IMG/VR virus record: IMGVR_UViG_3300031344_000002
Coordinates: 154,382-218,381 of that record
Length of the DNA stretch: 64,000 nucleotides
Strand: one strand, 5' to 3'
Shown one piece after another: positions 367 through 61,802 of the stretch. Both the position numbers and the translations under genes were made by a program. A model generated the notes under the pieces. It worked only from the letters and a program-made list of their open reading frames with translations. It had not been told where the DNA came from and did not search any database. Positions within the stretch are counted from its first letter, which is position 1. Each line of letters opens with the position of its first letter.

Positions 367-780
367 ATGGAAAATAAAGAAATAAAGATTAACGTACCTG
401 ATGGGTTTGAAATTGATAAAGATAATTCTACTTTTGAATTAATTAAATTCAAACCTGTTGTAAATAAAGAAGATAATAAATCCAAAGAAATGTCGGATTT
501 ATTATTCTCAATGTTTAATAACACTGTGTGCAAAATTACTGGTGAAAAAGAAATAACTTATTATAAATTAAATGGATATAATCCAAATTCTGATGATAAT
601 GAGTGGTTATTTCAACAGGATTGGAAAAACGGTAGATTATGGGTAAAATATTCACTTATTTGGAAGGTTTTTGAAGAAAGATTTGGTCTTAACTACGACC
701 AAATCAGAGATTTCATTCAAGATTGGGTGGAAACCAACCTAAATTGGAAGGGTTTAACACCAATTCAAGGCGGATATTGA
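367..780 (+). CDS. Uncharacterised phage protein whose C-terminus (VETNLNWKGLTP) is encoded by repeat 1 of the array
   Basis: 137-aa ORF; codons 727-762 coincide with repeat 1; the TGA stop (778-780) lies in spacer 1. Confidence 0.85.
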   Translation: MENKEIKINVPDGFEIDKDNSTFELIKFKPVVNKEDNKSKEMSDLLFSMFNNTVCKITGEKEITYYKLNGYNPNSDDNEWLFQQDWKNGRLWVKYSLIWKVFEERFGLNYDQIRDFIQDWVETNLNWKGLTPIQGGY

Positions 781-959
781 CGACAGCAAAAGGTGGAAAC
801 CAACCTAAATTGGAAGGGTTTAACACCGTTGCCAGTAATGCCCTTGCGGAACTATATGGTGGAAACCAACCTAAATTGGAAGGGTTTAACACCAGAAAAG
901 GATAACTGGTTTTCCTATTGTTTGGTGGAAACCAACCTAAATTGGAAGGGTTTAACACC
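726..959 (+). CRISPR. CRISPR-like mini-array: 4 identical 36-bp repeats, 3 unique 30-bp spacers, no cas genes in window
   Basis: GGTGGAAACCAACCTAAATTGGAAGGGTTTAACACC at 726-761, 792-827, 858-893, 924-959. Spacers 762-791, 828-857, 894-923 are each exactly 30 bp. Paired termini GGTG/CACC and inner stem AAAC/GTTT. The 36/30 geometry and paired ends resemble type VI-B repeats. Confidence 0.85.
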
Positions 960-986
960 AGATAAATAAATTAATAAGAAAAAATT

Positions 987-10749: not shown

Positions 10750-11499
10750 ATGTATAAAGGTGTTATTTATTGTGCAATCTCTCCATCAAATAAAAAATAT
10801 TATGGACTTACTTTAAATTTTTCAAGAAGAAAAAATGGTCATAAAAGATGTGCTGAATTTAAAAAATGTCGTTTTTATATTGCAATTAAAAAATATGGTT
10901 TTGATAATTTTATTTGGAATATAATAGAAACACATGAAAATGAAAGTAAAGGGAATCTTCAAAATATTTTAAATGAAAGAGAAAAATATTGGATTGAAAA
11001 AGATAAAACATATTATTCTGAATTTGGATATAATATGACTCGTGGAGGTAATGGTGGTGATGCATTTACAAACAAATCTAATGAAGACAAGGAAAGAATA
11101 CTTTTATGTAAAAGTAATAGATTTAGTGGTAAGAATAATCCAATGTATGGAAAAAAGGTTTATGATATTTGGTTAGAAAAATATGGAAAAGAAATTGCTG
11201 ATGAAAAATTAATGGAAAGAAAAAAAAGAACAAGTAATTCGCTTAAAGGAAAAAGTCATCCTTGTTCAAATGAAACAAAAGAAAAAATAAGAAAAAAACT
11301 TTTAGGACATAAAATTTCGGAAATTTGTAGACAAAAACGTTTAGGCAAAAAAAATGCTGCTGGAAAAAGAAATGATGAATTTAAATTAAAAATGAGTATA
11401 TCTCATAAGGGATTACCATCACCAAGAAAGGGATGCCATCTTACAATTGAAACAAAAAGAAAAATTAGTGAATCAAAATTAAATAAAAAGATTAATTAG
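10750..11499 (+). CDS. Free-standing GIY-YIG homing endonuclease with NUMOD3-like repeats
   Basis: VIY...YYG dyad, ERE.YWI, GYNMTRGG, NPMYGK, basic HxxETKxKI repeats. Confidence 0.85.
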   Translation: MYKGVIYCAISPSNKKYYGLTLNFSRRKNGHKRCAEFKKCRFYIAIKKYGFDNFIWNIIETHENESKGNLQNILNEREKYWIEKDKTYYSEFGYNMTRGGNGGDAFTNKSNEDKERILLCKSNRFSGKNNPMYGKKVYDIWLEKYGKEIADEKLMERKKRTSNSLKGKSHPCSNETKEKIRKKLLGHKISEICRQKRLGKKNAAGKRNDEFKLKMSISHKGLPSPRKGCHLTIETKRKISESKLNKKIN

Positions 11500-15469: not shown

Positions 15470-16024
15470 ATGATATTTGAAATAATTCCAAATCAGCAAA
15501 CTCCATGTATATTCGAACTTGTTCATGATTTCGAAGCCAATAAAGAAATATTTAATACATTTCTCGAATTTGCTTCTAATCATCGCAATGCGGTTGGACT
15601 AGCAGCAAATCAATGTAGTATTGATGGAGAAAGATTTATGCAAAATGTCTTTGCTCTTAGAAATTTAAAAATCAATACTTGGAAATTAATTATTAATCCA
15701 AAAATCGATTTATATTTTGGAATGGTTGAACCCAAACTTGAAGGTTGTCTTACTTGGGTAGGCAAATCTATTCTTGCTGATAGATTGCGTGCGGTTAAAG
15801 TTAGTTATGATGATATTGATGGTAATCATTATACTAATCAAATTTATGGTGGTTTTGAAGCTCAAATCTGGCAACATGAGATTAATCATCTTAATGGTAT
15901 TGAAGAAAATGTTGTCGATTATAATTATAAATTACCACCAATAAAAAAGATTGAAAGAAATGATAAATGTCCTTGTCTTTCAGGTAAAAAATATAAAAAC
16001 TGTTGTTTAATATTTGAAAGTTAA
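15470..16024 (+). CDS. def: Peptide deformylase with C-terminal SEC-C motif
   Basis: AVGLAANQ, EGCLT, QHEINHLNG; tail RNDKCPCLSGKKYKNCC. Confidence 0.9.
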   Translation: MIFEIIPNQQTPCIFELVHDFEANKEIFNTFLEFASNHRNAVGLAANQCSIDGERFMQNVFALRNLKINTWKLIINPKIDLYFGMVEPKLEGCLTWVGKSILADRLRAVKVSYDDIDGNHYTNQIYGGFEAQIWQHEINHLNGIEENVVDYNYKLPPIKKIERNDKCPCLSGKKYKNCCLIFES

Positions 16025-43646: not shown

Positions 43647-45965
43647 TTAAAATTCCATAACCACTTGTAAGATAGTAATTAACTTATCATCAAAATTTTC
43701 CATTCTATAAGGTAAATTAATATACTGTAAAACTTTTTCATTCTTTGCTTGTAATGCCAAAACTTCATCAATTTGTTTTTCCAATTTCTTTTGTGCTGCA
43801 GTTATTTTTATATTTGACAGGTCAAAATATGTAGATAAATATGGTTGAATATTAGCAATCTTATTTTCTCTACTTTTTGCAGGAATTGCAACAATACCAG
43901 CTTTAACATCATTGATTTTCTTACCCCATTTAGCATTTATCATAACAAATGATTTGTTGGTATATAATTCATGAATCTGATTGTATTTCTCAATAATCAT
44001 ATTGGTCTGAAAATACTGCATAATAGTATCAGATTTCCTATATAGTATCTTATTGAAGAAATCATCAACTTTATATGCTTTCTTGCAATATTGCATATAT
44101 TTAAGGTTATTTTCAGCCAATATAATGAACATTATACTTTTCTTACTTGCACCAGACCTTCTGTTTGAAAACTGATGGTCATAATCACTGTAATAAGTTA
44201 CCGGAATATCTTCACCAAATAATGTTGTGAATATTCTATATATTTCATGCAATTTGCTTTCATCAGCTTGATTACCATAGAAAATTGGACAATTATAATC
44301 AAAAAGACTTTCAAGTATAATTCTATATTTTGAATATCCACCTACGAACTTAACTGGAATGGTTGTATTGCGTAAGTCTTTGGACATTGAGTTTTTCTTC
44401 CTGTCAATCACAAAATCTTCTGGCACTTCCAATGTATCATAATTTTGTGCATGCTTACGTATAATCTCAAAATATTCTTCTTGCATTTCAAGTAATGATT
44501 GCATATAAGTTGTTGGTTTGCCTTTATCATCACATGTACTAGTAATTTGTGTATGAAAAAGGTCAGCAACATCATTTTGAATAAGTGAAGATGAATTACT
44601 AATGATATTGTTTTTTTCAATAATATGATATGTTTCGTACAAAGACTTTAAATATGCTTGCTTAACAATCTTGCGTACAAACATATCTTCAATATATAAT
44701 AAGTTTTTATTGTTATGTAATTCATCATAACCACCATCAAATCCATTACTAGTGCTGCTCCAACGACTTTTACGAGGTTTCTTACCATAAATACGAGATT
44801 TAAAAAAGAACTTGAATAAATGCTTATCAGAAGGCATTTTCATAAAACCATATTTGAAATTTGGAAAATCAACATCAGATTGTTTAATAAGTTTGCCAGT
44901 ATTAATACTACTACCATTACTAAAATTCAATACTCCAAAATTTTGTTTTACACTAAAGTATTCTTCTAATGTCTGGACATTCTGATATTGTTTTGAAATT
45001 AAAGCAATAATTTCTTTCTTAGCTGCTTCAAGTTTTTTCTTTAATATTTTAATCGTGTTCTCATCGTAATCCAGAGTTTCACGACTTATATTTACACCTA
45101 CTTCACCAACTTCAAGTTTTAATGCAATTGGAAGTTGATAATCACTTGAACTTAAATTAAGTATATTATAATCTATAGGATATGCAACTTTACCTAAACA
45201 TACATGCATGATAGTACCATAATCATCACCTCTGAATAAGAAAGATTTTCCACGAATGATTTGATATTTATTTGTCAGGGTTTTATCATAGCGAGTACTA
45301 TTATCATCATCTTCGTCAAATCCTTCGAAAACAACATTTTCAAAATAATAGAGTTGACGTACCATTTCTTTTGTAAATGTCTGCAGGTCTTTTTCTAATA
45401 CAGGTATACGAACTTCTGTGCCATTGTGTTCGTCAGTTTTCTCGCTGTGAAGTAATGATATTATAGGAGATTTTTTACTTTCATATATTTGATATGTATA
45501 TTTGATATTATCAAATATTGTAATAATAAAATAAGAATTATCATATTCACCTTCTCCAAAACCTGTGCTACGCTTGTAAGCCAGAGGACTCTTACTGCCT
45601 AACCCCCATTGACCGATTTGTTGAATATCTTCACGTTTTGTACTACTGAACATAACTGAAAATACATTATCAATTCTTTCTGTAGACATACCTACGCCAT
45701 AATCAATAAAAGAAACATAATAATTATTTGCTTGTTTATCAAAAATTTTCTTAATTATAACCGGAGTTTTAACACCAGCTTCAACATGACTATCAAAACA
45801 ATTTGAAGTTATTTCACGTACAACACTACCAATAGGATTGGTGTAAATGTTTTTTGAAAACATTTGAAAAATAATTGTTGCAGAATCTTTTGCTAATGTA
45901 ATATTCTTTTCTACTGTAGTTGTTTGTGTTTCAACATCTGAATAACTATTAACATTTAATTTCAT
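43647..45965 (-). CDS. rIIA: rIIA-like protein with N-terminal GHKL (HATPase_c) domain
   Basis: REITSNCFDSH, IDYGVGMS, STKR..IGQWGLGSKS, NGTEVRIPV; 772 aa, upstream of rIIB-like gene. Confidence 0.8.
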   Translation of the reverse strand: MKLNVNSYSDVETQTTTVEKNITLAKDSATIIFQMFSKNIYTNPIGSVVREITSNCFDSHVEAGVKTPVIIKKIFDKQANNYYVSFIDYGVGMSTERIDNVFSVMFSSTKREDIQQIGQWGLGSKSPLAYKRSTGFGEGEYDNSYFIITIFDNIKYTYQIYESKKSPIISLLHSEKTDEHNGTEVRIPVLEKDLQTFTKEMVRQLYYFENVVFEGFDEDDDNSTRYDKTLTNKYQIIRGKSFLFRGDDYGTIMHVCLGKVAYPIDYNILNLSSSDYQLPIALKLEVGEVGVNISRETLDYDENTIKILKKKLEAAKKEIIALISKQYQNVQTLEEYFSVKQNFGVLNFSNGSSINTGKLIKQSDVDFPNFKYGFMKMPSDKHLFKFFFKSRIYGKKPRKSRWSSTSNGFDGGYDELHNNKNLLYIEDMFVRKIVKQAYLKSLYETYHIIEKNNIISNSSSLIQNDVADLFHTQITSTCDDKGKPTTYMQSLLEMQEEYFEIIRKHAQNYDTLEVPEDFVIDRKKNSMSKDLRNTTIPVKFVGGYSKYRIILESLFDYNCPIFYGNQADESKLHEIYRIFTTLFGEDIPVTYYSDYDHQFSNRRSGASKKSIMFIILAENNLKYMQYCKKAYKVDDFFNKILYRKSDTIMQYFQTNMIIEKYNQIHELYTNKSFVMINAKWGKKINDVKAGIVAIPAKSRENKIANIQPYLSTYFDLSNIKITAAQKKLEKQIDEVLALQAKNEKVLQYINLPYRMENFDDKLITILQVVMEF

Positions 45966-47259: not shown

Positions 47260-47814
47260 TTATTTATTTTTCAATTTATTTAAATGTTCGATATCTTGTG
47301 GTGTTCCACTGAAATTAATCATTTCAAACCATGCTATTTTTAGGTCATCAGAAATTAAATCATCATCATATTCATAAGCCACATCAGCTTTAACCCATTT
47401 AGTAAATAATAATTCATTTTGCCCCCAATCATCTAAATCTTTGAAATAATATTCATTGCCTTTCCAGATGATAGGAAATTCATTACGACAAAAACCAATC
47501 CAAGCCGATAATCTTTGTTTACCATCAATTACTTGAAATGTTTTATGTTCGTGATGAATAAATGACATCATAGAGATGTTTAGATTTTTTAAAATTGATA
47601 ATATTAATTCTTGTTTCTGAAATAATGTCCAGACAAAAGGACGTTGTAAGTTCATTTTCTTTGTTGGTAAGTATACATCGAAATCTAAATCATATGGAAA
47701 ACTATCATTTTTCTTTTTTTCTATTATATCTTTTATATTAAATGCAACCAATCCATAGTTAATATGAAAAGGTAACTTTATTCTTACATCAGTTAATTTA
47801 AGTTCTTTTTTCAT
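47260..47814 (-). CDS. Stand-alone DUF262 (GmrS/ParB-like) domain protein
   Basis: LQRPFVW....QELILSIL...VIDGKQRL. Confidence 0.75.
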   Translation of the reverse strand: MKKELKLTDVRIKLPFHINYGLVAFNIKDIIEKKKNDSFPYDLDFDVYLPTKKMNLQRPFVWTLFQKQELILSILKNLNISMMSFIHHEHKTFQVIDGKQRLSAWIGFCRNEFPIIWKGNEYYFKDLDDWGQNELLFTKWVKADVAYEYDDDLISDDLKIAWFEMINFSGTPQDIEHLNKLKNK

Positions 47815-51193: not shown

Positions 51194-52180
51194 TTATTCA
51201 TGTAATTCACGATATTTATTATTATGTGAAATGCAAACATCAAGGCAATTTTTACGGCATATATCATCTTTATAGCAATCATGGTTTTTAAACCATTCTA
51301 AGCGTTCTAGTCTCATATTTTCTGAAATCCTACCGATTGGCTCACCCTTTTCTCTCATGTAAATAACACAAGGAAAATGATAATCTCCGGCAATAACAGA
51401 ATCATCTAAAACTATTGCACATTTATTATAATCACTTTCACACATTCCTCTCACATTTTTGCCATTAGCAAAATTATTTATTCTATATTTCAAAATAGGA
51501 TGCGCATTAATTATTCCTTCTTCAACTTCATTAAGTCTTGGTATTGGTATATTCCACTGAGCAGCAGAAATAATACGAATATCTGCCACACCCAATTTAT
51601 GGGCAAATCTTATCGTTTCAATAGTTTTATCAATATTTTCTGGAGTTAATACAACACCAACAGTAACATAAGTTAATTTGGATATTGCTTTAATATTATC
51701 AACTACTTTAAACCAAGAATCCTTAATACCACCAGCCATTTTATCGCCATCATCAGCACAACAAGCATCTAATGATATTGAGAAATCATTACAACCAGCA
51801 TTAATAAGTGCCATATATAATTCAATTTTATTTGAACCATTAGTTGATATTGCAATTCTATTTATACCTTTATATTTAGCATAAGTAATTATTTCCACAA
51901 TATTTTTATGTAATGTTGGTTCACCGCCAGAAAATCTTATATTTTCTAATGGAATATCTTTACACCACAAATCAATATTATGTTTAATTTCTTCTAATGA
52001 AAGTTCTTTAATTTTTCTCTGTCCATATATTTCAGCTTTTAAACCTCTACAATAATTACAACGAAAATTACAATATTCGGTTATAATCATTTCACATCTT
52101 TTCATTTGAGATGTTATTGATACATTTCTCACTCTTTCATCAGATAATGTATAAAACCCAATTTCTTTTAAATTCATCAT
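51194..52180 (-). CDS. Radical SAM protein with Cys-rich C-terminus
   Basis: CNFRCNYC, IRFSGGEPTLH, ISTNGS; distal C...PC...C...C..VC. Confidence 0.9.
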   Translation of the reverse strand: MMNLKEIGFYTLSDERVRNVSITSQMKRCEMIITEYCNFRCNYCRGLKAEIYGQRKIKELSLEEIKHNIDLWCKDIPLENIRFSGGEPTLHKNIVEIITYAKYKGINRIAISTNGSNKIELYMALINAGCNDFSISLDACCADDGDKMAGGIKDSWFKVVDNIKAISKLTYVTVGVVLTPENIDKTIETIRFAHKLGVADIRIISAAQWNIPIPRLNEVEEGIINAHPILKYRINNFANGKNVRGMCESDYNKCAIVLDDSVIAGDYHFPCVIYMREKGEPIGRISENMRLERLEWFKNHDCYKDDICRKNCLDVCISHNNKYRELHE

Positions 52181-52594: not shown

Positions 52595-55339
52595 TTGCAG
52601 AAGAAAATAAAAACTATGAAAACGAATAACGAAATTGTTACTATTAAACTAAATGATACGGTAAAAACAAAACATGGTATTGGTCTTGTTGTAGATGTTA
52701 TAGAATGGAACGATGGTATTACAAATCATATTGAATATGATGTTGAAACTCAGATTGGTAGTTATAGATTAATGAGAAGCGAAATTGAAAAATAAATTAA
52801 AATAATAAAATTAAATTATGGAAAATGAAACAAAAACTAACATACCTGATGGGTTTGAATTTGTTAACCCATGACCCTGTGGAAACTAATCTAAATTTGA
52901 AGTGTTTAATACCACAAATTTGTTCGGTTATACTTCCTAAATCCGTGGAACTAAAATAATTAAAAATAAATTATATATGGAAAAAGAAGATTTAATACTA
53001 TGTGAATGTGGTTCTCCTGAACATCAAATTATTATTCAAAAGGACGAAGAATTTAAAGACAGAATGATTTATTTGCAAATTCATTTAAGAACTTACAACA
53101 ATTTCTTTAAAAGAATTTGGATTGCAACTAAATACATCTTTGGTTATAAGTGTAGATATGGAAATTGGGATGAATTTATTCTCACAACAAATAATTATCA
53201 ACCAATGAAAAATGCTATTGAATTTTTAGAAAACGATATAAACAAAAATGAAAACGATATTTAAAACAATCATAAAAAATGCACTATTAATAATTATGGC
53301 TATCGTAACAACAATAGGACTGTTATCAACAGGATATTTTTTAATTTTTATTGAGTGTAAAATATATACCCTAATAAGTTTTATTATTACTTGTGCTGCC
53401 ATATCAGTAATGGAATACATTAATTTCGATAATAAAGAAAAAATCTTTAAAAAATTTTAAATTATGAAAGCAGAAGATATATTAAAAATTGACTGGAAAA
53501 CCACATCGTTAATAGCTATTGATGAATGTAGAATGGGATGTGATGGAAGACCAACATTAACCATTGGTCGTTCTTATCATCCAACTCATTATAATACAAG
53601 CTGGATAAGAATTTTTGATGATTATAATGAAGAACATCATTTCGAATATGATACACTTCAAAATTATTTTAAAATTGTGGCTAATGAAAATTTAGAAAAC
53701 ATATGTACGGCAAGTAAAATTAATGTATTAGAAAACCTAAAATGTGCTGTAGGATTTGATGCAAACAATACTTATCCCGCATTATTTCAACACTTAGGTT
53801 ATAGAAAATTAATTGCCGAACAACTATTAAGAGGTGGTGAAACAAATAAAATGAAAGAACTTGAAGAATTGTATGAACAAGTCAATATTAAAATAAAATT
53901 AATACTAGGACTACTATAATATGAATGTTGATAAAGTAAATATAAAAGATTGCCATCAGAATGCTTGCGCAAATTTCTTAATTGAAGAACATACGATTGG
54001 TGATTTAAGAGATGAAGCAGATTTTGATAATGTAGTTTATCATGCAAAAAAATCATTAATGTTTGCAAAAGACTTAATATTAAATATTGATGGAACTAAT
54101 GAGGAAAAGGCAAAATTTATTGATGATGTAATTCTGGATTATGATAAGTTTAAAGTAAATGGGCAAAGTAAAGAAGAAGTTTGTCCTAACTGTGGTTCAA
54201 AATTAAAACCTTCAATGTATGCATATATAAACGTTCAGTGTACAAAATGCGATTATAAAAGATAAAATTATGAAAGTAAATATAAATGAAATAATTGAAT
54301 GTGGTCATAAATTATATTATGACATCAATCCAAATAGTGAAATGGATGTGCCTTCTATGTTCTATGAACGATTAGAAAAAGAATGGGTAAAATGGAAAGA
54401 AAGTGGAAGCGAATTATCATTCTATGAATATTGTAAGCACAGCATATCTGATGTTGATGATTCATTACCTACTGATATTGAAATGGACGAACAAATTTTA
54501 AAAATAATGAATGAAAATTTGGTTGCTGGTACTGTTGCTGAAAATACAGAAGGAATTATTTGTAATAAATTTGCTACATCATTAAAAATTGTTCATTACA
54601 TAAAAGAATTAATGAAAAAATAAATAATAATAATATGGATATTAAAGAACCAGATTTAACGGCTGGCGGTATGGCATAGTTATTTTTTCTATCACAAAAC
54701 TAAATTAAAAGATATGGCTTACGATATTTATGGACAAAACTTAGCGAGCGGACACTGTGAGGTACATCCGTGGGTTGCGGAAAGTTATCCGTGCAGTTTA
54801 TGTTATGCAGAAAGCAAACCTAAACACGACCCAAGACAAAAGGAGTATGAACGTGCGGAGGCAGAACACTACGCTGAAATGGAGCGAGCGCACTACGAAG
54901 AACTGGCAAGAAAAAATAATTTGCTATACCGCTTGTTATGCTATGTGGCACTTGCAGTAAGTAAATTAAACGAGCGAGTTCAAAAATATAAGGAAAAAAT
55001 GTTAAGCAGAACGGTTGGTAGATTAATTCATAAACAATGATAAAAGAAGAAAAATCAACACAAGAAATAACAATTCATCACAAATATTGTGATGATTGCG
55101 GAGTGGAAATAAAGCGTGGTATGGCTTGTTCTGCTGCAAAGTGTGAGATGTGTGGTAAGGACTTGTGTGATAAGTGTGTTGAACATGAAGATAATGGCTC
55201 TGGTGATTACAGAATCGTTTATTGTTCTAGGTGTTGGCGTATTGGTCTCGAATATTTTGAAAAAATAAAAATATATGTAGATGAAATAGAAAATTTAAAT
55301 ACTGAATGGTTAAGAAAATGCCTTGATAAACAAGTGTAA
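52595..55339 (+). CDS. Plus-strand island of small hypotheticals (52595, 52977, 53248, 53464, 53921, 54270, 54714, 55037 Cys-rich)
   Basis: Co-oriented ORFs after TATATTTG box 52590-52597, divergent from the 52.5 kb promoter. Confidence 0.7.
52818..52959 (+). pseudogene. Internally deleted paralog of 367..780 retaining start region and repeat-spacer-partial repeat
   Basis: MENETKTNIPDGFEF (cf. MENKEIKINVPDGFEI), TGA at 52872-52874, then in the +1 frame VETNLNLKCLIP-QICSVILPKS-VELK*. Confidence 0.8.
52878..52950 (+). CRISPR. Degenerate repeat + 30-bp spacer + truncated repeat
   Basis: TGTGGAAACTAATCTAAATTTGAAGTGTTTAATACC (52878-52913) is 30/36 identical to the array repeat; exactly 30 bp later (52944) comes CGTGGAA. 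Confidence 0.7.
54655..54941. repeat. attC-like imperfect inverted arms
   Basis: TTTAACGGCTGGCGGTATGGCATAGTTATTT (54655-54685) vs AAATAATTTGCTATACCGCTTGTTATGC (54914-54941). Confidence 0.5.
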
Positions 55340-55504: not shown

Positions 55505-58500
55505 TTATTTTCTTTTATATTCTTTTAATTGTGCAGCCAAACTTAAATTCTCATGGCAAAATCCAGCTATTTCCCAAGCAGTTCTCTTATCTATGGTTAT
55601 AGTTAAAAAATCCTCACAACTTGGATAAACGCAAAATGTTATTTCAACATTCCCATCTTTTGTTTTCCGTATATCAGATATTCCAGTTTCCATAGTTTTT
55701 ATTATTTTATTTCAATTATATACGAATATTAATTAATAATGTTACAACATTTCCTCAATTTCAGCTAAAGTCTTTTTGTCTTTCTCTGGTAAATGAAAAT
55801 GTTTCATACCATTCTTAAATTTTTTACTGTTTATAATTTCTTTTAAATAAGAAACCATAAAACCATTAACAGTATCAACAGCACATATTGAATGTTGACC
55901 AGTACCAAAACAATTTATGATTGAGCATATAACTTTTTTTTGCTCATCATTTAATTGTAAGAAATGTAATGTTGGTAATTTTTCCATAATATTTATGTTT
56001 TTTATTATATATACGAATCTTATTTTAAAATGTTACAACAATATTAATAAAAAAGTAACCACCTGCAAATTACTGTTAATTAATTATGAGTAGATTAAAC
56101 AGATGCAAGTGGTTACAACACTAAAAATAAAAAGCTGCTCAATGACTTTCGTAAAGATACAACAACTTTTTAGATTTACCTAACATTTTAAAATGAAAAA
56201 CCCCTGCAATTCTTTTCGTATCTGTACAACGTACAGTTTCAGGAATAACAAGGGTTTTTCTACTTGGCTCATCATGGACAGATGAATGTCCTCCAAATAA
56301 CCATTGCCGTGAGGATATCATCCTGTATACCATCCGCTTACTTGACAACCTAGCTATGGTAAATCATTTTCAGCAGACTTTCGGTTGGTTTTCGTATCTT
56401 AAATATCTTTAGAACGTTTTGGTTTTTCAAATAAAATCTTTGTTACAATATCAGCAATATAAGTTGTGATTTTAATAATAATCATTATTGGAAATATTAT
56501 CGTTACAAATCCAATTAAAAAATCATCATCTTCAATCATTTCAAATTTTACTAAAATATTGGTAAATATTCTTCCCAAAATTAAGTAAATGATGATGCCT
56601 ATAATTATATGAAATGCTATTGTCATAATTTTTTGTTTTCTTTATTATACGAATTTGAATTAAAAATGTTACAAATTATGGCTTAATTATTATTTCACCT
56701 TCCCAAACTCCCCAACTAGACTTTTCACGAAAATACTTATAATGCGTAACAGTATCTTCAGTCAATACCCACATGTCACTTTCTTTCCAAGTAATATTAA
56801 TTAATTTCTCATTTGCTTTTAATTCAATTTCCATTGTTCCACCAAAAGTTTTCGTTCTAATATTTTCAGTACAAGAAGAAAATATTATTATTGCTGAAAT
56901 CAATAATGTTAGGAACAACCACCAATAAAAATCATTTTTTTTCATAAATTTATTTTTTATTTAATTTTTTTAAAATTTCATATAATAAAACTTCTGTAGG
57001 TGTTGCTTCTCTCATAGACCCATTTGGAAAAATAATTTCAGAAGTTCCAAACATATCTTTTTTGTTTCTAATCTTAAATGGTAACATAAAAAATGAATTA
57101 TTATGCAATATTACAAATAATTTTCTAATTAATTACTATTTTTTCTAATTATTTTTTGGTTTATAAATAAATCTACCATCAATATTCTTTCTGGTTAATA
57201 CAAATCCATGTTTACGATAGAAAGCATATAACCTTCTTTTATTTGCTCCATAGATAGTTGTAGCGTATAGTTGTATTTGAATATTATATTTATTAGCTAA
57301 TGTTATTATCTCAGACATTATTATTGAACCCCAACCTTTATTTTGTTGAGATTTTTTGATATTAATTAATGCGAGATAGATATATGGGCATTCATTCAGT
57401 TCTTTATATTCTAATTTAAGGTTTTGAATAATATTCTTATATTTAACTTTCTTTAAATTAAATATTAAATCATCAAGTATATCCTGATTTAATAACATAA
57501 AACCTTCTAGTATTTTTTATAAATACAGAAGGTTAGTTTTTCTTTTTATATTTTAGATATAGTTCGTGAATAATACAAAACAAGATTAATAAACTAATGC
57601 TAATTGTGCAGTAAGGAAATTGCATATTGTTATATCATAATTATTGTTTAATTGTTAAAACCGCAGGATTTACTACTCCATCACCTTCATGTCCATATTC
57701 CTTATTGTGCCATTTCCGGAGTTCTTCACCATGTTTCCAGCATTGAGAAAGAAGATTAACAGCACAACCGTACATAAATCCAGTTATACCCATAAATCCA
57801 AGTTCATGCGAAGTTTTTTCGGCAATATCAACAAGTTTATTTCCTTTAGCTATTTCAACTTGCATAAGTTTTGCCCATCCTTCTGCATAATCCAAAGCAG
57901 CTTTTCCGTATGGGTCTGTATTTGCTTCACGGCTTTTATTCCATCCCTCGGTGTCTTTTAGTTCTAATTCAATACCATTAATTTTAGTATCAAATACGGC
58001 TTTTTCAGCAGCTTCTTTTTTACGGTATTCTTCAGCTTCATAAGCTGCTTTTTCTTCTTTAATTTTTGTAAGCCGTTTAAACTCTGCCTGTGTTTCTTTA
58101 TCGTATTTAGCAACGCAATTAGTACCAACAGTTTTCCATCCCATTGTCCACGAATTTGAGTAATCACGGTATAAATATTTTAATTTGGTATTTTTATCAA
58201 CCAAACATTTTACACCATTGAAATCAAATTCAACCACTATGTTTTTTTCTGTGGCTATTTCTTTAGCTTTTAATGCTACATTGTCAAATGTATTTCCGCA
58301 ACTTGCTTCTAATTTATAAGTTTTCATAATATATGTTTTAAATTATTATACGCAAAAATATGATAAATGTTTCATTTATTCACAAGATTTTTCTCATATT
58401 GTTTTACGTGACCTGAATTAACTCTATATAATTGATTTGTTTTTGGATTAGCGATAACTAAATCCTGAATATATGTTTTAAGAACAGATTTATATTCATA

Positions 58501-60563: not shown

Positions 60564-61802
60564 ATGATTAAAGCATATAAATATCGAATCATGCCAACTA
60601 AGGCACAACAAACACTAATCAATAAACATATTGGTAGTTGTCGATTTGTATATAATCTTGCTTTAGAAACCAAACAAATTGCTTATGCGGGTAATAAAAT
60701 TAATTTATCTTGTTTTGACCTAATTAAACAACTTCCTGCTTTAAAAAAAGAATGTGAATGGTTAAAAGAAATTAATGCACAATCATTGCAACAATCAATA
60801 ACACATTTAGATAATGCTTTTACTCGATTCTTCAAAGGACAATCAGATTTTCCTAATTTTAAAAAGAAATGTGCTAAACAATCATTTAATATACCACAAA
60901 GTGTAATTCTTGATTTTGATAATAATAAACTTATCATACCCAAATTTAGAAAAGGAATTAAAATAATTTTACATAGAACTTTTAAAGGTACTATCAGACA
61001 AGCAACTATAAGCAAAACTCCAACAGGTAAATATTTTGTAAGTATATTAGTTGAAAATAATGTTGTGATACCAAATAAAGTAAATATTGAAAGTAATAAT
61101 AGTATTGGTATTGATTTAGGTCTTAAATCATTCTTAATAACTTCTGAAGGTGAGACATTTAATAATCCCAAATATTTAAGAAAATCACAATCTAAATTAA
61201 AATATATACAAAGTAAATATTCAAAATATAAAGGCAAAAAAACAAAACATAAATTAGCTCTTTTGCATGAAAGTGTTGCTAATCAAAGAAAAGATTTTTT
61301 AAATAAAATATCAATTAAACTTATTAGTGAGAACCAAACAATATGTTTAGAAGACTTGAATATTAAAGGTATGTCAGCAAGATGTAAACCAAAACAAGAC
61401 GAAAATGGTAGATATTTACCTAACAGTCAAAGTGCAAAATCAGGACTTAATAAGTCTATAACTGATGCTGGTTGGGGTATGTTTGTTGATATGCTTAAAT
61501 ATAAAGCAGAATGGCAAGGTAAAAACATATTACAAATTGGTAGATTTGAACCATCAAGTAAAACTTGTAATGTTTGTGGCAATATTAATAAAGAGTTAAC
61601 TCTTGATAATAGAGTTTGGACTTGTAGTAATTGTAATACTGTTCTTGATAGAGATGTTAATGCAGCAATTAATATTAAAAATTTTGCTTTAAGAAATTAC
61701 ATTAAATTGTGTAAGGAACTTACACTTGAAAATCATAGCGAACTGCCTACATTAGTGGGAGTGATGACCTATGAAGCCAACAAGTCTTTAGCTTGTAGGT
61801 AG
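60564..61802 (+). CDS. tnpB: RNA-guided endonuclease TnpB (IS200/IS605 family)
   Basis: HTH_OrfB start (KAYKYRI.PT..Q...I....G.CRFVYN); RuvC D (GIDLG), E (LEDL), D (DRDVNAA); zinc finger CNVC/CSNC. Confidence 0.95.
   Translation: MIKAYKYRIMPTKAQQTLINKHIGSCRFVYNLALETKQIAYAGNKINLSCFDLIKQLPALKKECEWLKEINAQSLQQSITHLDNAFTRFFKGQSDFPNFKKKCAKQSFNIPQSVILDFDNNKLIIPKFRKGIKIILHRTFKGTIRQATISKTPTGKYFVSILVENNVVIPNKVNIESNNSIGIDLGLKSFLITSEGETFNNPKYLRKSQSKLKYIQSKYSKYKGKKTKHKLALLHESVANQRKDFLNKISIKLISENQTICLEDLNIKGMSARCKPKQDENGRYLPNSQSAKSGLNKSITDAGWGMFVDMLKYKAEWQGKNILQIGRFEPSSKTCNVCGNINKELTLDNRVWTCSNCNTVLDRDVNAAINIKNFALRNYIKLCKELTLENHSELPTLVGVMTYEANKSLACR

What the first reader, a model, noticed from the sequence alone, without database searches (positions are those of the whole stretch)
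367..968. CRISPR-like array built into the coding 3' end of a small phage gene
Seen: four identical 36-bp repeats separated by three unique spacers of exactly 30 bp. Repeat 1 is not downstream of gene 367..780; it encodes that protein's last conserved-looking residues (W-VETNLNWKGLTP). The 66-bp period is 22 codons, so every repeat is in frame. The repeat ends in CC, so the junction codon is always Pro. Spacers 2 and 3 are open (LPVMPLRNYM, EKDNWFSYCL); only spacer 1 has a stop. The repeat folds into a bulged stem (GGUG/CACC, AAAC/GUUU, CCU/AGG). Established: 36/30 geometry with paired termini is typical of type VI-B (Cas13b) arrays, common in Bacteroidota, and phages carry cas-less mini-arrays. 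Inference: (a) a phage array that borrows host Cas13b or Cas1-Cas2 and is processed from the mRNA; (b) the 137-aa protein is the cognate partner of its own guide RNAs, a compact RNA-guided system; or (c) 30-bp insertions diversify the protein tail. A repeat doubling as conserved coding sequence is not a standard CRISPR arrangement.
Basis: partly seen in the sequence, partly recalled or inferred. Interest (0 to 1): 0.92.

Follow-up and report, generated by a model that had tools for sequence, protein, structure and literature searches.

The report
CRISPR array growing from phage gene
A small, conserved gene of a giant uncultured phage ends in 36 bases that are both its last 12 conserved codons and the first repeat of a Cas13b-type CRISPR array with no cas genes, and this gene-plus-array module recurs throughout a large phage protein family, pointing to an undescribed way phages may exploit or disarm RNA-targeting CRISPR.

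Summary
In detail: four identical 36-bp repeats with three unique 30-bp spacers (726-959). Repeat 1 encodes residues 121-132 of the ORF 367..780.

It is not a one-off:
- The same phage (218-kb contig) has two more gene::array modules and one decayed copy.
- Relatives, including four distant lineages read at DNA level, start their own 36-bp arrays inside their own homolog.
- A profile search finds 703 family clusters; 41 of 66 informative gene calls repeat their own terminal 12-mer.

The repeat evolves like a highly conserved peptide: nonsynonymous change is near zero and synonymous change equals the gene body. Yet it keeps rare codons and an invariant 3' ACACC, and it resembles published type VI-B repeats (z 5-6).

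The gene side behaves as the leader. Distal repeats decay, an identical strain differs by exactly two gene-proximal units, and the ancestral gene end lies after the last repeat.

No cas gene, host array or spacer target was found.

Best reading: a cas-less, VI-B-like viral array whose leader and first repeat lie inside a gene, probably loading or decoying a host Cas13b. Tail diversification is rejected. This is a new variant of a known kind.

The parts
367..780 (+). Small phage gene (137 aa). Its body is the functional 'leader' of the array, and its last 12 conserved codons are repeat 1. The present stop lies in spacer 1.
   Evidence: ORF. Family of 703 clusters. Body pN/pS 0.3-0.6. AlphaFold2 pLDDT 85.6, with residues 121-132 structured.
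726..761 (+). Repeat 1, which encodes VETNLNWKGLT and the first two bases of the Pro codon. It is the template copy from which the other repeats derive.
   Evidence: pN is about 0 with pS like the gene body. Rare codons are retained.
762..791 (+). Spacer 1 (30 bp, 40% GC). It supplies the present C-terminal tail IQGGY and the stop codon. It is absent from the otherwise identical strain L016.
792..827 (+). Repeat 2
828..857 (+). Spacer 2 (30 bp, 47% GC). Absent from strain L016.
858..893 (+). Repeat 3
894..923 (+). Spacer 3 (30 bp, 30% GC). This is the oldest spacer and is shared with strain L016.
924..959 (+). Repeat 4 (distal end of the array)
960..969 (+). Displaced ancestral end of the gene. 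In frame it reads (P)-D-K-stop. The same 'AGATAA' follows the last repeat in distant family members.
52819..52965 (+). Decayed fourth module. The gene's N-terminus (MENETKTNIPDGFEF...) is joined to a degenerate repeat (6 mismatches, at 52878-52913), followed by a spacer-like stretch.

Best explanation
This is a genuine CRISPR-type repeat-spacer array of type VI-B-like units (36-bp repeat, about 30-bp spacer). It has no cas genes of its own, and it grows out of the 3' end of a conserved small phage gene.

Anatomy (shown):
- The gene body takes the place of the leader.
- The last 12 conserved codons are repeat 1.
- Every further repeat is a copy of those 36 bp.
- Each insertion lands directly after repeat 1. 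It replaces the protein's last few residues with spacer-encoded ones and pushes the original end (...TP-DK-stop) downstream.

Mechanism (inferred):
- Insertions are made by a Cas1-Cas2-type integrase supplied in trans, most likely by the host. Bacterial VI-B arrays, which lack their own adaptation genes, acquire spacers this way.
- The gene's transcript carries the array. A Cas13b-like host enzyme binds each repeat and cuts at its 3' end. This would release spacer-repeat guides and leave an mRNA without a stop codon.
- The phage thereby fills the host's RNA-targeting effector with guides of its own choosing. The benefit is a decoy or anti-CRISPR effect, and possibly attack on rival phages.

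The biochemical function of the protein itself is unknown.
For: Architecture and generality:
- There are three intact modules plus one decayed copy in one phage.
- Every related locus starts its array inside a homolog.
- Four distant lineages have their own 36-bp repeats and 28-32-bp spacers.
- The family has 703 clusters, and 41 of 66 informative gene calls repeat their own terminal 12-mer.

CRISPR-like behaviour:
- Spacers are unique, 28-32 bp long (28 of 35 are 30 bp), and richer in GC than the phage (0.35-0.37 against 0.26).
- Distal repeats degenerate.
- An identical strain differs by exactly two gene-proximal units.
- The native stop is kept after the last repeat.

VI-B likeness:
- Alignment to published VI-B and VI-F repeats gives z 5-6, with 0 of 400 shuffles as good. 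The match is in the sense orientation and is better than to VI-A repeats (repeats from PMC13187072).
- The rare codon AAG (13% usage) and an invariant 3' ACACC are retained.

Mechanistic precedents:
- VI-B arrays acquire spacers in trans (PMC8092290).
- Cas13b cuts at the 3' end of the repeat, and an extra first-repeat crRNA sequesters Cas13b and weakens defence (PMC13187072).
- The phage modules lack the masking leader-repeat hairpin found in host arrays.
- The phage carries other counter-defence genes, namely a Tad4 homolog.
Against: - No array with this repeat was found in 185,579 species genomes or in JGI metagenomes outside this phage family. Known viral mini-arrays match their host's repeats.
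- No Cas13, Cas1 or Cas2 was found in the 64-kb window or in about 20 kb around eight other modules. About 150 kb of this phage's genome could not be read.
- No spacer target was found in the phage itself, in related loci, in deposited phages or in IMG/VR.
- Synonymous sites of the repeat drift as fast as those of the gene body, and the repeat hairpin is broken without compensation in many variants. This is unexpected for a scaffold that Cas13b recognises as a hairpin.
- Transcription, processing and any effect on immunity are untested.
Confidence: 0.55

Rival explanations
1. The arrays are functionless by-products ('neo-CRISPR'). The conserved 3' end of the gene happens to be, or descends from, a sequence that host CRISPR integrases accept as a repeat. 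During infections, spacers are occasionally mis-integrated there. These insertions are nearly neutral because repeat 1, and therefore the protein, stays intact. Only the protein is under selection.
For: - The repeat shows peptide-level constraint, while most synonymous sites drift at the body rate.
- The hairpin is not conserved.
- Some members have a single repeat and no spacer (L007, L013).
- Arrays are short, and no spacer target was found.
- Strains with different tails coexist.
Against: - Arrays are the rule across a deep family, with several modules per genome.
- Rare codons matching the VI-B core (AAG-GG) and the 3' ACACC are retained against codon bias.
- Resemblance to VI-B repeats persists in lineages with under 30% protein identity. 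This would require every lineage to stay acceptable to its host's integrase without any selection for it.
Confidence: 0.2
2. The module is an autonomous phage system. The small protein is the partner of its own repeats. For example, it might bind the repeat RNA or DNA, direct insertion into its own gene, or recruit a nuclease. The physical overlap would then keep protein and guide scaffold co-evolving.
For: - Gene-array linkage is obligatory throughout the family, and no cas gene or host array has been found.
- The protein has a confident fold with no known relative.
Against: - The protein has about 120-140 residues, with no nuclease, integrase or RNA-binding signature in Pfam, NCBIfam, PHROGs or PADLOC.
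- Co-variation of repeat and peptide follows trivially from their being the same DNA.
- The repeat resembles VI-B repeats, which already have a known partner.
Confidence: 0.1
3. It is a coding tandem repeat or a device for diversifying the protein's C-terminal tail. On this view the 22-codon units are translated and selected as protein.
For: - The 66-bp period equals 22 codons.
- Some gene calls read through several units. One example is the 227-aa call in L024 with six in-frame units whose decayed copies keep an L-x-E...K...L-T-P pattern.
Against: - Spacers are no more open in the gene frame (18 of 30) than in the other two frames (22 and 12 of 30).
- 7 of 35 spacers have lengths that break the frame.
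- Most proteins stop within the first spacer.
- Spacer GC differs from that of the phage.
- Identical strains carry different tails.
Confidence: 0.04

Closest known systems
Cas-less CRISPR arrays and mini-arrays of viruses, including huge phages (PMC11656645; PMC7162821)
   Same: Short arrays in a viral genome with no adaptation or interference genes, thought to use host Cas proteins. The window comes from a 218-kb phage contig.
   Different: - Known mini-arrays are intergenic, match the host's repeats exactly, and mostly target related viruses.
- Here the leader and first repeat are coding sequence.
- No host array was found and no target was found.
- The repeat drifts at synonymous sites.
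Solitary repeat units / RNA anti-CRISPRs (Racr) (PMC10651486)
   Same: A phage-borne copy of a CRISPR repeat that could sequester Cas proteins. Single-repeat family members exist (L007, L013).
   Different: - Racrs are small non-coding RNAs with their own promoter.
- That survey found none for type VI, and its pipeline masks ORFs before searching, so this class would be invisible to it.
- Here the repeat is translated.
Bacterial type VI-B arrays (Cas13b): the extraneous first-repeat crRNA and in-trans adaptation (PMC13187072; PMC8092290)
   Same: - 36-nt repeat and 30-nt spacer.
- Sequence resemblance to VI-B repeats (z 5-6).
- Transcription runs from leader to array in the sense orientation.
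- No adaptation genes next to the array.
   Different: - No cas13b gene is present.
- There is no leader-repeat masking hairpin.
- The termini are GGTG...CACC rather than GTTG...CAAC.
- The whole-repeat hairpin is not conserved.
- The leader is a protein-coding gene.
Off-target 'neo-CRISPR' formation by Cas1-Cas2 at repeat-like genomic sites (my recollection of Nivala et al. 2018; not checked here)
   Same: A repeat-like sequence outside a CRISPR locus, even inside a gene, can seed an array by duplication of the target plus insertion of a spacer.
   Different: Those are sporadic laboratory events. Here the arrangement is conserved across hundreds of lineages.
C-terminal diversification systems (diversity-generating retroelements, shufflons; my own knowledge)
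   Same: Variation is concentrated at the 3' end of a gene.
   Different: - There is no template/variable repeat pair, reverse transcriptase, inverted repeats or recombinase.
- The inserts are unique 30-mers that often contain stop codons.

Membership tests
CRISPR array (generic) | Three or more near-identical direct repeats of 23-55 bp separated by unique spacers of similar length | tested here: met
   Four exact 36-bp repeats with three unique 30-bp spacers. Across the family, 35 distinct spacers measure 28-32 bp.
CRISPR array (generic) | Polarity: a leader end that gains units and a distal end with degenerate repeats | tested here: met
   Distal repeats are degenerate in L001 array 1, L004b, L011a, L022 and L024. 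Strain L016 differs from the window by two gene-proximal units. A deletion cannot be excluded.
CRISPR array (generic) | Associated cas genes | tested here: not met
   None in the 64-kb window or within +/-10 kb of eight other modules. The rest of the 218-kb genome was not readable.
CRISPR array (generic) | Spacers matching mobile elements or other targets | tested here: inconclusive
   No match in the phage itself or related loci at up to 6 mismatches, in deposited phages, or in IMG/VR for two spacers. Source-sample metagenomes could not be searched.
Type VI-B (Cas13b) array | 36-nt repeat and 30-nt spacer | tested here: met
   Geometry of VI-B as given in PMC13187072.
Type VI-B (Cas13b) array | Repeat sequence related to known VI-B repeats, in the transcribed orientation | tested here: met
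   z 5.5-5.9 against F. columnare and P. gingivalis VI-B repeats, with 0 of 400 shuffles as good. Scores are weaker for the reverse complement and for VI-A repeats. The resemblance is about 60-65% identity, not family-level identity.
Type VI-B (Cas13b) array | Hairpin spanning the whole repeat, which Cas13b recognises | tested here: inconclusive
   The window copy folds (-10.9 kcal/mol). Across 13 variants there is no covariation, and three pairs are often broken.
Type VI-B (Cas13b) array | cas13b in the locus or in the cell | not testable with these tools
   Absent from all sequence read here. The host is unknown, and no Cas13b query sequence was available to scan the rest of the contig.
Viral mini-array / solitary repeat unit (Racr) | Repeat identical or nearly identical to the host's CRISPR repeat | tested here: not met
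   No array with this repeat in GTDB species genomes or JGI metagenomes, even with 10 positions left free or with the termini freed. The single genome hit is a chance match inside an unrelated gene.
Viral mini-array / solitary repeat unit (Racr) | Non-coding, intergenic RNA element | tested here: not met
   Repeat 1 is translated, conserved coding sequence.
Coding tandem repeat protein | Units and linkers kept in frame and open by selection | tested here: not met
   Open in the gene frame in 18 of 30 spacers, against 22 and 12 of 30 in the other frames. 20% of spacer lengths are not a multiple of 3.

The most novel reading that the evidence does not exclude
The 36 bases are one element with two functions, and the small protein and its array form an autonomous phage system. 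For example, the protein might recognise its own repeat RNA or DNA, or direct insertions into its own gene. Alternatively, this gene family may be evolutionarily tied to the origin of type VI-B repeats. Either reading would mean this is not simple borrowing of a host array.
Probability: 0.12. Interest if true: 0.95.

Novelty: new variant of a known kind. Interest (0 to 1): 0.78.

Why it matters
If the reading holds:
- These would be the first type VI-like CRISPR elements found in phages. A systematic survey found viral solitary repeats for every CRISPR type except type VI, and its method masks ORFs.
- It would be a first case of a CRISPR leader and first repeat that are protein-coding, so that each spacer acquisition rewrites the end of a protein.
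- The family is large (703 clusters at 50% identity) and unannotated. A whole class of phage-borne arrays has probably been discarded as 'repeats inside genes'.
- It gives a directly testable candidate for a natural anti-Cas13b or Cas13b-hijacking strategy.
- It is a natural experiment on how much sequence and structure a Cas13b-type repeat can lose while staying usable.

Tried and rejected
- **Rfam:** no family at gathering scores, and only chance hits at E up to 10.
- **Pfam, PHROGs, NCBIfam, PADLOC on the protein:** only a sub-threshold Ntox23 hit (E 0.005-0.018, 15-17 bits against a cut-off of 26.2), treated as noise.
- **Foldseek:** nothing in the PDB. In BFVD, only uncharacterised phage proteins at TM 0.5-0.65.
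- **The 772-aa window ORF as a compact Cas13:** it is a GHKL/Topo VI-B-like ATPase.
- **The 1225-aa ORF in L022 as Cas13b:** no Cas hit.
- **Host search:** two genome scans and one metagenome scan. The single genome hit (Bacteroidales MAG, L020) lies inside an unrelated 509-aa protein and is a chance match.
- **Erwinia phage ChrisDB gp84:** a borderline DNA match to the repeat, but unrelated by profile comparison.
- **Cultured relatives:** tblastn of two family members against 50,697 deposited phages found nothing. Only the N-terminal 30 codons resemble a crAss-like phage.
- **Protospacer searches:** all negative.
- **Literature string search:** a VI-B repeat recalled from memory returned nothing. 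Published repeats were used instead.
- **Promoter and terminator scan:** uninformative in this AT-rich DNA.
- **Literature search for precedents of gene-embedded arrays:** none found.

Full report
**1. The observation**

The window holds four exact copies of one 36-bp unit at 726, 792, 858 and 924 on the + strand. They are separated by three unique 30-bp spacers. No shuffle of the window gives a single match.

ORF 367..780 (137 aa) runs through repeat 1, which encodes VETNLNWKGLTP, and stops at a TGA in spacer 1. All repeats share the gene's frame. After repeat 4 the frame reads D-K-stop at 960-969.

The window is about 26% GC, while the repeat is 47% GC. Rfam has no matching family.

**2. It is a module, not an accident**

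The window is part of a 218-kb viral contig. That contig carries further copies of the same arrangement:
- About 1 kb upstream of the window, a 135-aa paralog ends in the same 12 residues and is followed by six repeats, the last one degenerate.
- Elsewhere on the contig, a third paralog starts a six-repeat array. Its repeat differs at two positions, both synonymous in the gene's frame.
- A fourth, decayed copy lies in the window at 52819-52965.

A first protein search found 26 homologs at 40-100% identity. All end in the same motif followed by a variable tail, and some gene calls read on into repeat 2. Every locus recovered from metagenomes with a degenerate repeat pattern again has its first repeat at the 3' end of a homolog.

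**3. The family is deep**

A profile search of 1.84 billion representative proteins gave 703 clusters at E <= 0.001.

Distant members carry their own versions of the terminal 12-mer. Examples are VEEHLKLEGFTP, LETHLKNGGLTP and VATALNCKDFTP. In 41 of the 66 gene calls with a tail long enough to judge, that same 12-mer recurs in frame about 10 residues later. Several others show frameshifted or decayed copies.

DNA from four distant lineages (L021, L022, L023, L024/25) confirms arrays of three to six 36-bp repeats with 28-32-bp spacers, each starting inside the gene.

All contexts look like phage genomes and none has cas genes. No deposited phage encodes a recognisable family member.

**4. How the repeat evolves**

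- The gene body is under purifying selection, with pN/pS 0.3-0.6.
- In the 12 repeat-encoded codons, pN is 0-0.07 while pS is as high as in the body.
- Of nine variable repeat positions in the close family, seven are third-codon positions (p = 0.0025).
- AlphaFold2 (pLDDT 85.6) places these residues in the fold, at the end of a helix plus a strand. The peptide is therefore real and strongly constrained.
- There is also nucleotide-level signal. The repeat is built from codons that are rare in this phage (GTG 9%, ACC 11%, AAC 11%, CTA 6%, AAG 13%). Lys-AAG, Leu-CTA, Thr-ACA and the 3' ACACC persist even in distant lineages.
- The proposed hairpin has no covariation support and is often broken.

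**5. It behaves like a CRISPR array with the gene as leader**

- Spacers are unique, tightly sized, and richer in GC than the phage.
- Distal repeats decay.
- A strain from another sample is 100% identical on both flanks. It lacks exactly 132 bp, namely spacers 1 and 2 with their repeats, at the gene-proximal end.
- The same 'AGATAA' (D-K/N, then a stop) follows the last repeat in the window, L004, L021 and L022. This marks the original end of the gene.
- Spacers are not enriched for open frames, and 20% break the frame. Translation of the units is therefore not what is selected.

**6. Which CRISPR type**

I compared the repeat with published first repeats of type VI systems (PMC13187072).
- The window, L021 and L023 repeats align to VI-B and VI-F repeats with z 5-6. 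The best partners are Flavobacterium columnare and Porphyromonas gingivalis. None of 400 shuffles scores as well.
- The match is in the gene's orientation, and it is better than to VI-A repeats or to the reverse complement.
- The conserved K-G of the peptide is encoded by AAG-GG, which corresponds to the GAAGGG core of VI-B repeats.

This is resemblance, not proof of membership. No cas13b was seen, and no host array with this repeat exists in 185,579 species genomes or in JGI metagenomes.

**7. Most likely mechanism**

The anatomy described in sections 1-5 is shown. The following steps are inferred:
- A trans-acting Cas1-Cas2 inserts the units. This has been demonstrated for a VI-B array lacking its own adaptation genes (PMC8092290).
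- The mRNA carries the array.
- A Cas13b-like enzyme binds each repeat and cuts at its 3' end (PMC13187072). This would give guides plus an mRNA without a stop codon.

That paper also shows that an extra crRNA made from the first repeat sequesters Cas13b and weakens phage defence, and that host leaders mask the first repeat with a hairpin. The phage modules show no such hairpin. A phage that expresses unmasked repeats would therefore be expected to dilute the host's guides. Use of the spacers against rival phages is also possible.

The phage carries a Tad4 homolog, which shows that it invests in counter-defence.

**8. Rivals and limits**

- A by-product model (mis-integration at a repeat-like gene end) explains the free synonymous sites and the single-repeat members. 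It does not explain the retained rare codons or the persistence of arrays across the family.
- An autonomous protein-plus-guide system is not excluded, but nothing beyond the linkage supports it.
- Tail diversification is rejected.

The main gaps are these:
- The host is unknown.
- About 150 kb of this phage's genome could not be read.
- No spacer target was found.
- No expression data exist.

**9. Novelty**

Cas-less arrays in huge phages, viral mini-arrays and solitary repeat units are all known. What is new is a type VI-like viral array whose leader and first repeat are conserved coding sequence, and its spread across a large unannotated family. The main survey of viral repeat units masks ORFs and found none of type VI. 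Literature searches found no precedent.

Noticed in passing
L001 7732-8450 (same contig, about 1 kb upstream of window position 1): A second gene::array module: a 135-aa paralog followed by six repeats, the last one degenerate (...ACATA), and five spacers.
   Followed up: yes
L003 2892-3625, minus strand (same 218-kb contig); also in L002, L010 and L014: A third module. The gene call (166 aa) reads through spacer 1 and repeat 2. Five repeats carry the ACT-AAT variant. The fifth repeat has the window's ACC-AAC form, which suggests exchange between arrays.
   Followed up: partly
window 52819-52965 (+): A decayed fourth module. The gene's N-terminus is fused to a degenerate repeat, with most of the gene deleted.
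   Followed up: partly
window 57641-58327 (-): A 228-aa protein with a strong match to Tad4, an inhibitor of type I Thoeris defence (E 4e-36).
   Followed up: no
window 60564-61802 (+): An IS200/IS605-type TnpB RNA-guided endonuclease (NCBIfam E 9e-108) inside the phage genome. Its guide RNA was not looked for.
   Followed up: no
window 367-456; P0027-P0030; crAss-like phage cr116_1 (MT774389, 9318-9407): The first ~30 residues (KEIKINVPDGFEIDKDNSTFE...) form a separate module. It is shared with otherwise unrelated phage proteins and with an unannotated stretch of a crAss-like phage from human faeces.
   Followed up: partly
L024 10001-10684 and L025 2025-2708: A 227-aa gene call reads in frame through six 22-codon units. 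The repeats decay with distance but keep an L-x-E...K...L-T-P pattern, and the units include two different repeat types.
   Followed up: partly
P0031 (760 aa) and P0050 (588 aa): Proteins with five copies of the family domain, each followed by reiterated 12-mers. These are probably tandem modules read through in a GC-richer genome.
   Followed up: no
window 43647-45965 (-), 10750-11499 (+), 15470-16024 (+), 47260-47814 (-), 51194-52180 (-): Other annotations: a GHKL/Topo VI-B-like ATPase (772 aa), a GIY-YIG/NUMOD3 homing endonuclease, a peptide deformylase with a SEC-C motif, a GmrSD_N-domain protein, and a radical SAM protein.
   Followed up: no
window around 36-37 kb and 52-56 kb: GC skew and gene strand switch at these points, marking boundaries between divergent gene blocks.
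   Followed up: no
L017 1-1800 (276-kb ENA contig that overlaps the window's start): OmpA-like and ice-binding-domain proteins are encoded a few kb upstream of the modules. This may hint at a cold-environment Bacteroidota host.
   Followed up: no
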